Shown here piece by piece: positions 11,805-13,344 of a DNA stretch of 64,000 bases (positions are counted from its first letter, which is position 1; each line of letters starts with the position of its first letter). The DNA comes from Octopus sinensis (Eukaryota). The translations under genes and the position numbers were made by a program. The stretch covers positions 74,338,001 to 74,402,000 of the forward strand of contig NC_042998.1 of NCBI RefSeq assembly GCF_006345805.1, in the 5' to 3' direction. Below the pieces are notes generated by a model. The model searched no databases. It saw only the letters and a program-made list of their open reading frames with translations, and was not told the origin of the DNA.

Positions 11805-12213
11805 CGTAGTGGCTGTGTGGTAAGAAGCTTGCTTCCCAACTACATGATTCCAGGTTCAGTCCCACTGTGTGGCACCTTGGACGAGTGTCTTCTGCGATAG
11901 CCTCAGGCCGACCAAAGCCTTGTGAGTGTATTTGGTAGATGGAAACTGAAAGAAGCCTGTTGTATACATATGTATGACTTTGTGTCTGTGCTTGTCCCCC
12001 TGGCAACTGATGTTGCTGTATTTTAATCACTGTAACTTAGCAGTTCAGCAAATGTTATCAATAGAATAAGTATTAGGCTTACAAAGAATGTCCTGGGATT
12101 GATTTGTTTGACATAAACTCTTTAAGGCATACATAGATAAAACACAATCACACATACACAATGATTTGATTATCTAAACAGAGATATCCAATGACTGAAA
12201 CAAGTAAAAGAAT
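11805..12213 (+). mobile_element. tRNA-derived SINE carrying a foreign 64-bp insert near its 3' end
   Basis: Collinear with 56091-56464, except that after taaggc the consensus ggtgctccagcatggccgcagt is replaced by 12124-12187. Confidence 0.85.
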
Positions 12214-12289
12214 GCCATTTACATAGAGAGAAAAAAAAAAAAAACGATATAACAACACAAAAATGACAAAAAAGAAAGCAAAAATAAAG

Positions 12290-12560
12290 ATAACTAGTAC
12301 TCAGATTTTTATGTTCAATCATTTTGTTGCTTCAATGAATTTGAACATCTTATTTATGGGTTGTGGATCCTTGAAAATGAATTGCACTTCCAAATTTGAT
12401 AACCTTTTCAAGATTGGTTTTGTAATATATCTTCTCTTTGATGGTAATATCTGCATTGGAATAAATATCATAAAGTTTCTGGATAATTTCCACAAGAACA
12501 CAAAAGTAGATGCATACGCTCTGTTTGTGAGAGACTTTAGTTGAGAAGAGACTCGACTTA
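12290..12560 (-). mobile_element. Penelope-like element RT C-terminal/linker remnant
   Basis: Minus frame reads KSLTNRAYAS...ILPSKRRYITKPILKRLSNLEVQFIFKDPQPINKMFKF, resembling the PLE motifs SLxxRAxxICS and LPY...I.VVFKP. Confidence 0.45.
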
Positions 12561-12794
12561 TTCAAAGTCAGCGAAGTCTTCAAGCCTTGCTATATCTGAT
12601 AGATTTTTGTATGTTGATAGATCTGTCTGAAATAATGGAAGATTAAAGCTTGATAGCAGATCTCTTGAGTCTTGCCAATGTTTAAATTATTTCAATAAAA
12701 TTAATTATACTTTGCTGAATATGTGAAAGATTTGGAATGGAAGCTATAGGTATTATTTCTTTTTGAACTCCTCTTTCTAATTCATCTGCTTTCT

Positions 12795-13245
12795 TGTTCC
12801 CTTAAGCATTTAAACTGGCCATATCTGGTCAAAATGATCTACCTGTTTTATCTTCAAATTGGCCATATCCAACCTTTTACCCTATAATCTTATTCTGAAA
12901 ATAAACAATCACATTGAAATCTCAAAGCTACAAAATAAAGCATGATTAATTCAAAACAATCATCATCGTTGTTTAACATCTGCTTTCCATGCTGGCATAG
13001 GTTGGACGGTTTGATTGAGGACTGGCAAACCAGGAGGTTGCACCAAGCTCCAATCTGATCTGGCAAGATTTCTACAGCTGGGTGCCCTTCCTAATGCCAA
13101 CCACTCCGAGTGTGTAGTGAGTGCTTTTTATGTACCACCGGCACAAGGGCTAGTGAGCCAGCACACTGGCATTGACCACACTTGAACGGTGCTTTTTACG
13201 TGCCACATTACATTTGATAGAGTAATATGAATGCTAAAGGGTTAA
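12795..13245 (-). mobile_element. TTAA-flanked (piggyBac-type) MITE, interrupted by an RTE 3' end
   Basis: Same family as 28626 and 44352 (gcatttaaactggccatatc ... atgctaaagggTTAA); left TIR degenerate. Confidence 0.8.
12961..13206 (-). mobile_element. RTE LINE 3' end nested in MITE
   Basis: catcatcgttgtttaacatctgctttccatgc ... gggtgcccttcctaatgccaaccactcc ... gctttttacgtgccac is the reverse complement of the 37952-38522 tail. Confidence 0.85.
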
Positions 13246-13344
13246 TATCTCTGTTTAGATAATCAAATCATTGTGTATGTGTGATTGTGTTTTATCTATG
13301 TATGCCTTTTATCATAAGAGATACGTCTGTATATTTATAATGCA

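What the first reader, a model, noticed from the sequence alone, without database searches (positions are those of the whole stretch)
12124..13308. Perfect 64-bp templated inverted insertion inside a SINE, copied from 1.06 kb downstream
Seen: 12124-12187 is the exact reverse complement of unique-looking DNA at 13245-13308, which begins at the edge of a MITE. In the SINE it replaces about 22 nt of consensus (compare 56410-56436) and joins through a 5-nt microhomology, aaggc. The SINE then resumes in its original orientation, so this is not an inversion. Established: deletion plus templated insertion with microhomology is the signature of polymerase-theta end joining or replication template switching. 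Inference: a recent event (zero mismatches, or kept identical by selection or conversion) that creates a perfect 64-bp dsRNA stem in the CELF pre-mRNA, a strong ADAR/siRNA substrate arising de novo without a TE pair.
Basis: partly seen in the sequence, partly recalled or inferred. Interest (0 to 1): 0.7.

Follow-up and report, generated by a model that had tools for sequence, protein, structure and literature searches.

The report
Recent inverted templated insertion in SINE
An old octopus-type SINE had about 21 of its bases replaced, recently, by a perfect backwards copy of unique DNA lying 1 kb downstream; this is a clear but ordinary example of a DNA template-switch mutation, and no function is shown for it.

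Summary
12124-12187 is the exact reverse complement of 13245-13308 (64/64), and the 64-mer occurs nowhere else in the window. Twelve other copies of the SINE (3 in the window, 9 in fetched Octopus vulgaris DNA) read AAGG(C/T)-GGTGCTCCAGCATGGCCRCAG-TCAAATGACTG. The focal copy has lost those 21-22 nt and carries 58-59 foreign nt instead. There are 4-5 nt of microhomology (AAGGC) at one junction and 0-1 nt at the other. The SINE body and tail stay collinear, so this is neither an inversion, nor a TIR element, nor a TE pair. The SINE head is about 10% diverged from consensus and the arms 0%, so the event is far younger than the SINE (roughly under 6.5 My). The best reading is a template-switch or MMBIR-type templated inverted insertion. 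That is a known kind, here long (59-64 nt) and long-range (1.06 kb). One refinement: the copied tract stops within one base of where a piggyBac-type transposase would cut beside a TTAA-flanked MITE; I cannot tell whether that is chance. The ADAR/dsRNA claim is untested. The CELF exon (43829-44000) has an upstream intron, but it is not shown to reach 12-13 kb. I could obtain no reads, alleles or orthologous locus, so an assembly artefact is not formally excluded.

The parts
11808..12128 (+). 5' and central part of an octopus-type SINE copy, up to and including AAGGC
   Evidence: It aligns to 3 other copies in the window and 9 or more in O. vulgaris loci L011/L012. The head is 90.3% identical to the consensus of 11 copies. 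ARAGORN and Rfam do not call it.
12124..12128 (+). AAGGC junctional microhomology, shared by the SINE and the reverse complement of 13304-13308
   Evidence: Other SINE copies read AAGGC or AAGGT at this position. The template reads GCCTT at 13304-13308.
12124..12187 (+). Left arm, the derived copy: exact reverse complement of 13245-13308. 12129-12186/7 (58-59 nt) is foreign to the SINE and replaces GGTGCTCCAGCATGGCCRCAG.
   Evidence: 64/64. The tract is absent from all 12 other SINE 3' ends.
12188..12215 (+). SINE 3' tail resuming in the original orientation (CCAATGACTGAAACAAGTAAAAGAATG). T12187 may already belong to it.
   Evidence: 96% match to the tails of other copies.
12188..13244 (.). 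1057-nt spacer: SINE tail, A-rich tract, about 550 nt of DNA unique in the window, then the MITE
   Evidence: no repeats for 12240-12793; no hit in the O. vulgaris sample.
12794..13241 (+). piggyBac-type MITE (termini CCCTTAAGCATTTAAAC... and ...GAATGCTAAAGGG) with another abundant repeat nested at 12960-13206
   Evidence: Uninterrupted copies at 44352-44575(-) and L011:13215-13436(-), and a further copy at 28623-29002. All are flanked by TTAA.
13242..13245 (+). TTAA target-site copy at the right end of the MITE. The copied tract ends on its last A.
   Evidence: The piggyBac cleavage position, 4 nt into the flank, is taken from PMC7351741.
13245..13308 (+). Right arm, the inferred template: DNA unique in the window between the MITE and a long imperfect palindrome
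13349..13643 (.). Context: about 295-bp imperfect palindrome (centre near 13471, about 80% paired), beginning 40 nt right of the template arm
   Evidence: (DNA fold z = -9.85 for 13300-13800).
43829..44000 (+). Context: CELF-type RRM1 exon with ATG at 43833, a conserved CAG acceptor and a GT donor
   Evidence: (PF00076; closest named hit CUGBP ELAV family member 2).

Best explanation
One recent template-switch event made this repeat. A growing DNA strand copying the SINE left to right stopped after ...CTTTAAGGC (12128). Its AAGGC end paired with GCCTT at 13304-13308 on the same-sense (+) strand, about 1.18 kb ahead. It copied that strand backwards for 58-59 nt to 13245/6, then returned to the SINE 21-22 nt beyond where it had left, using at most 1 nt (T) of homology. 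In the four-point model the points are 1 = 12128, 2 = 13303, 3 = 13245 and 4 = 12188. The result is a net gain of 37 nt in the SINE and a perfect 64-bp inverted repeat with a 1057-nt spacer. I consider a replication-associated switch (nascent leading strand onto exposed lagging-strand template, MMBIR/FoSTeS-like) somewhat more likely than polymerase-theta end joining of a two-ended break. Shown: the anatomy, the missing SINE segment, the microhomology, and the relative age. Inferred: the direction (right arm is the template), the enzyme and pathway, and any consequence for RNA.
For: The arms are 64/64 complementary and unique in the window. Twelve other SINE copies all carry GGTGCTCCAGCATGGCCRCAG where the focal copy has the foreign tract, and none carries the tract. 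AAGGC is native to the SINE and is also present at the outer end of the template. SINE body and tail are collinear and in the same orientation. The SINE head has JC distance 0.104 from consensus while the arms show 0/64 mismatches. P(0 mismatches) is about 6e-7 if the arms were as old as the SINE, and the 95% upper bound on age is about 6.5 My using the octopus TE calibration of PMC13282606. The pattern (an insertion in inverted orientation near its template, flanked by microhomologies, replacing the 1-to-4 fragment) is the published signature of template-switch mutations and MMB-TIs (PMC5453318; PMC8421209; PMC7954356). The template lies between two hairpin-prone elements, a TIR-bearing MITE and a 295-bp palindrome, which are plausible fork obstacles.
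Against: No ancestral (empty) allele, orthologous locus or raw read could be obtained, so the polarity and reality of the event rest on the SINE consensus and one assembly. The tract (59-64 nt) and especially the distance (1.06 kb) are well above typical short-range events: median 12 nt and maximum 128 nt in great apes, with templates searched only within 100 nt. The return junction has essentially no microhomology. The stop of copying at the MITE's TTAA is not explained by the plain model.
Confidence: 0.75

Rival explanations
1. The event was started or bounded by a piggyBac-type transposase acting on the resident MITE. A cut at the MITE's right end, 4 nt into the flank, either created the DNA end that was used or ended the template, so the flank copy stops exactly at the cleavage position.
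For: The copied tract ends at 13245, or at 13246 if T12187 is the SINE's own T. piggyBac cleaves the flank strand exactly between TTAA (13242-13245) and 13246 (PMC7351741). The MITE has canonical TTAA|CCC...GGG|TTAA ends in 4 other copies. piggyBac families are reported as recently active in O. vulgaris, with 474 insertions at 2% divergence or less (PMC13282606). The chance that a boundary falls within 1 nt of one of about 6 such MITE ends in 64 kb is of order 3e-4. This estimate is post hoc and rough.
Against: The MITE is still in place and is old (about 75-80% identical to other copies; its left TTAA is decayed to TGTT). Run-off on a cleaved or nicked template would copy TTAA fully (expected ...GAGATATTAA, observed ...GAGATAT). 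I could not build a simple pathway from a cut at this end to the observed two-junction product that also keeps the donor intact. The coincidence was noticed after the fact.
Confidence: 0.1
2. It is polymerase-theta-mediated end joining of a double-strand break inside the SINE. The left 3' end (AAGGC) primed on nearby DNA, was extended 59 nt, dissociated, and was joined to the trimmed right end.
For: The pattern of deletion, templated insert and microhomology is the TMEJ scar (PMC7165422 and PMC11292364, listed). Junction homologies are 4-5 nt and 0-1 nt.
Against: The template strand needed (+ strand, 1.1 kb to the right of the break) is the 5'-ended strand that resection removes or leaves duplex (inference). 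From my own recollection, not checked here, typical Pol-theta templated inserts are shorter and copied from within tens of bp; the yeast inverted insertions at breaks in PMC11724301 (abstract) are mostly about 5-34 bp. This cannot be separated from the replicative model by sequence.
Confidence: 0.2
3. It is an assembly or consensus artefact: the inverted 59-nt patch is not in the animal's genome.
For: No reads or second assembly could be examined. The window's ORFs are absent from the protein/contig index.
Against: The window has no Ns. The patch has clean junctions, with microhomology and a matching small deletion inside an otherwise collinear SINE. That is the footprint of a biological process, not of a mis-join, and assemblers do not invent a 64-bp inverted copy absent from the reads (inference).
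Confidence: 0.06
4. Both arms are fragments of an unrecognised dispersed repeat lying in opposite orientations, or an old inverted repeat kept identical by gene conversion or selection.
For: Only 64 kb plus 40 kb of related genome could be searched. Octopus genomes are about two-thirds repeats (PMC13282606).
Against: There is no third copy in the window or in L011/L012. Every recognised repeat here is 67-93% identical between copies, whereas the arms are 100% identical. The left copy is exactly 59 nt, bounded by SINE sequence on both sides, with no target-site duplication and with a 21-nt loss. That does not look like a TE insertion. From my own recollection, not checked here, 64 bp is well below the homology length usually needed for efficient conversion.
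Confidence: 0.04
5. The tract was picked up by reverse-transcriptase template jumping when the SINE integrated, making a chimeric retrocopy.
For: Reverse transcriptases do jump templates, and the patch lies in the 3' part of the SINE, which is copied first.
Against: The SINE copy is about 10% diverged from consensus while the arms have 0/64 mismatches. P is about 6e-7 if both date from integration.
Confidence: 0.01

Closest known systems
Template-switch mutations under the four-point model (Loytynoja & Goldman 2017, PMC5453318; Walker et al. 2021, PMC7954356), including those that create RNA hairpins and de novo miRNAs (PMC8794818, PMC10710096)
   Same: The 1-to-4 fragment is replaced by the reverse complement of a nearby 2-to-3 fragment in a single event. 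This creates a perfect inverted repeat de novo, with a net length gain, as in 65% of great-ape events.
   Different: The 2-to-3 fragment is 59-64 nt (great-ape median 12, maximum 128). The template is 1.06-1.18 kb away, whereas those studies search within about 100 nt. The loop is about 1 kb, so this is not a compact hairpin.
MMBIR templated insertions (MMB-TI; Osia et al. 2021, PMC8421209)
   Same: An insertion in inverted orientation near its template, flanked by microhomologies and replacing a short stretch of original sequence. Such events are found as germline variants.
   Different: MMBSearch defines templates within 100 bp; here the distance is ten times larger. One junction has 1 nt of homology or less.
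Polymerase-theta (TMEJ) templated insertions and foldback inverted insertions at breaks (PMC7165422; PMC11724301)
   Same: Deletion plus templated filler plus microhomology.
   Different: Per the PMC11724301 abstract, the yeast inverted insertions are very short (mostly about 5-34 bp) and arise by foldback at the break. Here the template is 1 kb away, on the strand that resection would remove.
ODIRA / leading-to-lagging strand switching at short inverted repeats (PMC10766183)
   Same: A nascent strand switches onto the opposite parental strand at a replication fork through a short inverted homology.
   Different: ODIRA does not return to the original template and yields large inverted amplifications. 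Here the polymerase returned after 59 nt.
Inverted TE pairs (for example inverted Alu/SINE pairs) as dsRNA and ADAR substrates
   Same: A long intragenic inverted repeat, about 1 kb apart, able to form dsRNA if transcribed.
   Different: The arms are not copies of a transposable element. They are perfect (0/64) rather than 10-25% diverged.

Membership tests
Template-switch mutation / MMBIR templated insertion | The inserted tract is the reverse complement of sequence nearby on the same chromosome | tested here: met
   64/64 complementarity, 1057 nt apart.
Template-switch mutation / MMBIR templated insertion | The tract replaces (or is added to) ancestral sequence at the site, with the ancestral state known | tested here: met
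   The ancestral state is inferred from the consensus of 12 other SINE copies, not from an outgroup locus. 21-22 nt (GGTGCTCCAGCATGGCCRCAG) are missing and 58-59 nt are gained.
Template-switch mutation / MMBIR templated insertion | Microhomology at the switch junctions | tested here: met
   AAGGC (4-5 nt) at the entry junction and T (0-1 nt) at the return junction. Only the entry junction has meaningful homology.
Template-switch mutation / MMBIR templated insertion | Template within the operational short range (about 100 nt) used by published detectors | tested here: not met
   The distance is 1057-1180 nt. This limit is a search setting in PMC8421209 and PMC7954356, not a mechanistic requirement.
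Template-switch mutation / MMBIR templated insertion | Derived state absent in outgroup or other individuals (polarised event) | not testable with these tools
   No orthologous or allelic DNA could be retrieved.
Pol-theta end joining scar | Dependence on POLQ and origin at a double-strand break | not testable with these tools
   Sequence alone cannot show this.
TIR transposon / MITE bounded by the two arms | The arms are the termini of one mobile unit flanked by a target-site duplication, with the host sequence resuming outside the arms | tested here: not met
   The SINE resumes at 12188, inside the arms, not after 13308. The outer flanks CTCTTT / TTATCA show no duplication. No other copies were found.
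Inversion with duplicated breakpoints | The segment between the arms is inverted relative to the ancestral order | tested here: not met
   SINE body and tail are collinear and in the same orientation across the left arm. Undoing an inversion would split the SINE.
Inverted pair of a dispersed repeat | Arm sequence present in many copies at family-typical divergence | tested here: inconclusive
   There are two copies in 64 kb and none in 40 kb of O. vulgaris, and identity is 100% against 67-93% for real repeats here. The whole genome was not searchable.
piggyBac-superfamily MITE (the element abutting the template) | TTAA target-site duplication, CCC...GGG termini, short TIRs, multiple non-coding copies | tested here: met
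   Five copies (3 in the window, 2 in O. vulgaris). Four have TTAA|CCCTTTAG...CTAAAGGG|TTAA. The focal copy has TTAA on the right and decayed TGTT on the left. No transposase relationship was tested.

The most novel reading that the evidence does not exclude
Cuts or nicks made by piggyBac-type transposase at resident MITE ends seed or delimit long-range inverted copying of the adjacent flank. Under this reading, MITEs generate perfect dsRNA-forming inverted repeats out of unique DNA. In cephalopods such template-switch-born duplexes would be a source of new ADAR substrates in neural genes such as this CELF locus.
Probability: 0.07. Interest if true: 0.65.

Novelty: new member of a known kind. 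Interest (0 to 1): 0.3.

Why it matters
It is a clean, datable natural example showing that template switching can copy about 60 nt from more than 1 kb away and build a long perfect inverted repeat from non-repetitive DNA in one step. Published detectors look only within about 100 nt, so events like this one are systematically missed. A wider-radius scan of cephalopod genomes could show how often such events occur and whether their end-points cluster at transposon termini. If the locus is transcribed, the 64-bp duplex would be an ideal ADAR or Dicer substrate in an animal group known for heavy RNA editing, but nothing here shows that it is used.

Tried and rejected
1. Allelic or orthologous DNA through the protein index. 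Twenty ORFs from 8.5-15.7 kb and the exon ORF are not in the collection. The 93-aa inter-arm ORF has no homologues. The closest exon-bearing contigs (Logan ERR14857108, ERR129213xx, SRR9969974, ERR3431203; one TARA contig) are only 88-91% identical in the exon and unalignable outside it, so they come from other species.

2. Metagenome scans. The arm core and, as a positive control, the SINE core both returned 0 hits, so the negative result for the arm is uninformative.

3. Rfam and ARAGORN on the whole window returned nothing.

4. TIR-element, inversion, TE-pair and retrotransposition-time chimera readings were rejected on anatomy and age.

5. My first exact-repeat scan used a 3-mer complexity filter that wrongly dropped the 64-mer itself. 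It is used only for the reverse-orientation control and the count of other perfect inverted repeats.

6. I tried to build a pathway from a piggyBac cut at 13245|13246 to the observed product. Run-off predicts a full TTAA copy, and use of the cut end as a primer predicts a giant palindromic chromosome. Neither fits simply, so this reading is kept only as a low-probability rival.

Full report
**Observation.** The window was read at 11700-13700 and scanned for repeats. Pair I1 has arms 12124-12187 and 13245-13308, 64 nt, 100% complementary, 1057 nt apart. A script confirmed the identity and showed that complementarity ends abruptly at all four edges. A short-query BLAST of the 64-mer against the whole window finds only these two sites; the next hit is 13 nt. 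A window-wide self-BLAST finds only three inverted repeats of at least 30 nt and 93% identity. They are this one, a 41-nt pair at 13557-13597 / 13732-13772, and a 37-nt palindrome at 53054-53090. A control scan for reverse (not complement) exact matches of 20 nt or more within 3 kb found none.

**What the left arm sits in.** 11808-12215 is one copy of a SINE that has three other copies in the window (8874-9274, 15257-, 56100-56459). A translated ORF from this SINE hit two 'Hypothetical predicted protein [Octopus vulgaris]' entries. The two 20-kb O. vulgaris loci fetched through them (L011, L012; assembly GCA_951406725.2) contain many copies of the SINE and of the two other repeats discussed below. 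They contain nothing matching the 64-mer or the inter-arm DNA that is unique in the window. The window is therefore from an octopus or a close relative; the species itself was not identified.

Twelve other SINE 3' ends were aligned, 3 from the window and 9 from O. vulgaris. All read ...AAGG(C/T) GGTGCTCCAGCATGGCCRCAG TCAAATGACTGAAACAAGTAAAAGA. The focal copy reads ...CTTTAAGGC ATACATAG...CAGAGATA(T) CCAATGACTGAAACAAGTAAAAGAATG. So 21 nt of SINE are missing (22 if T12187 is counted as inserted) and 58-59 foreign nt stand in their place. AAGGC is native to the SINE and is also the outer end of the template (GCCTT, 13304-13308), giving 4-5 nt of microhomology. The return junction shares at most the single T. 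Copy 8866 shares with the focal copy the subfamily insert AAA(T/C)(C)CTTT just before AAGG, which confirms that CTTTAAGG is SINE sequence.

**What the right arm sits in.** 12794-13241 is a MITE into which another abundant repeat (12960-13206) has inserted. Uninterrupted copies of the MITE lie at 44352-44575(-) and at L011:13215-13436(-). Further copies lie at 28623-29002 and L011:6500-6667(-). Four other copies have TTAA|CCCTTTAG...CTAAAGGG|TTAA. A TTAA target site with CCC/GGG termini is the hallmark of the piggyBac superfamily. In the focal copy the right TTAA is 13242-13245 and the left one has decayed to TGTT. The right arm starts on the last A of that TTAA. To its right, 40 nt beyond 13308, begins a 295-bp imperfect palindrome (13349-13643, centre near 13471, about 80% paired). 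The left arm of the 41-nt inverted repeat is embedded in the right half of that palindrome.

**Readings excluded.**
- A transposon bounded by 64-bp TIRs. The SINE resumes at 12188, inside the arms, not after 13308. There is no target-site duplication and no other copy.
- An inversion with duplicated breakpoints. SINE body and tail are collinear and in the same orientation, so undoing an inversion would split the SINE.
- A pair of dispersed repeats. Real repeats here are 67-93% identical between copies, whereas the arms are 100% identical and have no third copy. The sample is only about 104 kb, so this test is formally inconclusive.
- Capture by reverse-transcriptase jumping when the SINE integrated. 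The SINE head is 9.7% diverged from the consensus of 11 copies (JC 0.104). Arms of that age would differ by about 20%, giving P(0/64) of about 6e-7.

**Age.** I used the calibration of a recent O. vulgaris repeat study, in which JC 0.065 corresponds to about 18 My (PMC13282606). Two arms of 64 nt then accumulate about 0.46 differences per My. Zero differences gives a 95% upper bound of about 6.5 My and a median-type bound of about 1.5 My. This assumes neutrality and no conversion.

**Mechanism.** The anatomy is the published signature of a template-switch event. The fragment between points 1 and 4 is replaced by the reverse complement of a nearby fragment 2-to-3 (PMC5453318). Equivalently, it is an insertion in inverted orientation near its template, flanked by microhomologies (MMB-TI, PMC8421209). 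Here 1 = 12128, 2 = 13303, 3 = 13245 and 4 = 12188.

Which pathway acted is inference. The strand copied is the + strand at 13245-13308, the same sense as the strand being extended in the SINE. After a simple two-ended break in the SINE, resection of the right-hand fragment degrades exactly that strand. At a rightward-moving fork, in contrast, the + strand is the lagging-strand template and is naturally single-stranded. I therefore favour a replicative switch of the MMBIR/FoSTeS type, related to the first step of ODIRA (PMC10766183), over polymerase-theta end joining. Sequence alone cannot decide. The MITE and the palindrome flanking the template are plausible fork obstacles, but this is circumstantial.

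**An unexplained detail.** Copying stopped at 13245, or at 13246 if T12187 is the SINE's own T. piggyBac transposase cleaves the flank strand exactly 4 nt from the transposon end (PMC7351741), that is, between 13245 and 13246. piggyBac families are reported as recently active in O. vulgaris. The coincidence is striking, of order 3e-4 for such MITE ends in this window, but the estimate is post hoc. Several points count against a link. The MITE is old and still in place. Run-off on a cut template would copy the whole TTAA. I could not derive the two-junction product simply from a cut at that site. I keep this as a rival with probability of about 0.1.

**Gene context and the RNA claim.** An ORF at 43803-44066 contains [56 protein letters not shown]. 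Its homologues carry PF00076 (RRM_1), and the closest named one is 'CUGBP ELAV family member 2'. I aligned it with three contigs from other species. Conservation starts at a CAG acceptor 4 nt before the ATG (43833) and ends at AAAG|gtaggt (44000|44001). The exon is therefore 43829-44000 and has an intron upstream. Whether that intron reaches back the 30.5 kb to 13308 (31.6 kb to 12187) is unknown; no 5' exon was located, and 17-21 kb is somewhat GC-richer. If transcribed, the arms would form a 64-bp perfect duplex (28% GC, -102.8 kcal/mol). Established knowledge of ADAR and Dicer says such a duplex would be a good substrate. No RNA data could be consulted, so this remains conjecture.

**Comparison with what is known, and novelty.** Template-switch mutations that create perfect inverted repeats, RNA hairpins and even new miRNAs are documented (PMC5453318, PMC8794818, PMC10710096). 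In great apes the copied fragment has a median of 12 nt and a maximum of 128 nt, and templates are searched only within 100 nt (PMC7954356). MMBSearch uses the same 100-bp radius, and its authors say distant templates are missed. The present event is a long and long-range member of this known kind. It is not a new kind.

**What could not be done.** No reads, second assembly, allele or orthologous locus could be obtained. An assembly artefact (about 6%) and a whole-genome dispersed repeat (about 4%) are therefore not formally excluded.

**Verdict.** The structural interpretation is supported. The pathway assignment and the RNA consequences are unproven. Interest is modest (0.3).

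Noticed in passing
window 13349-13643: A 295-bp imperfect palindrome (about 80% paired, centre near 13471, with an inner palindrome at 13440-13502) starts 40 nt right of the template arm. Folded as DNA, 13300-13800 has z = -9.85. It has no other copy in the window.
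   Followed up: partly
window 13557-13597 and 13732-13772: A second young inverted repeat: 41 nt, 1 mismatch, 134-nt spacer, no target-site duplication. Its left arm is largely an insertion in the right half of the 13349-13643 palindrome and abuts that palindrome's outer arm. It may be an older template-switch event at the same spot, which would hint at a local hotspot.
   Followed up: partly
window 12794-13241; 28623-29002; 44352-44575(-); L011:13215-13436(-); L011:6500-6667(-): A roughly 220-bp piggyBac-type MITE family (TTAA|CCCTTTAGTATTTAAAC...GAATGCTAAAGGG|TTAA) is shared by the window and Octopus vulgaris. The focal copy, and possibly the 28.6-kb copy, carry a nested insertion of another abundant repeat.
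   Followed up: partly
window 56464-63977: About 7.5 kb of degenerate (TA)n/(TATG)n-like microsatellite. GC falls to 10% and GC skew approaches +1 (almost no C). It is interrupted at 57961-58241 by a 63-nt tandem repeat of 4.4 units derived from the abundant repeat that is also nested in the MITE.
   Followed up: partly
window 43829-44000 (+): A CELF/CUGBP-type first coding exon (RRM1). The ATG lies 4 nt after a CAG acceptor that is conserved in contigs from three other species, where the exon is 88-91% identical at the nucleotide level and 100% at the protein level.
   Followed up: yes
window 11126-11252: A small hairpin-like element: 48-nt arms, 90% complementary (27 nt perfect), around a (TA)n spacer, 560 nt upstream of the SINE.
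   Followed up: no
window 53054-53090: An isolated 37-nt near-perfect palindrome (ctgtggcactgattttcttagaaaatcagtgccacag).
   Followed up: no
window 17100-21000: A somewhat GC-richer, C-skewed stretch with CT-, CCN- and CTG-type simple repeats. It could hold a 5' exon or promoter of the CELF gene. If it does, the inverted repeat would lie upstream of the transcription start.
   Followed up: no
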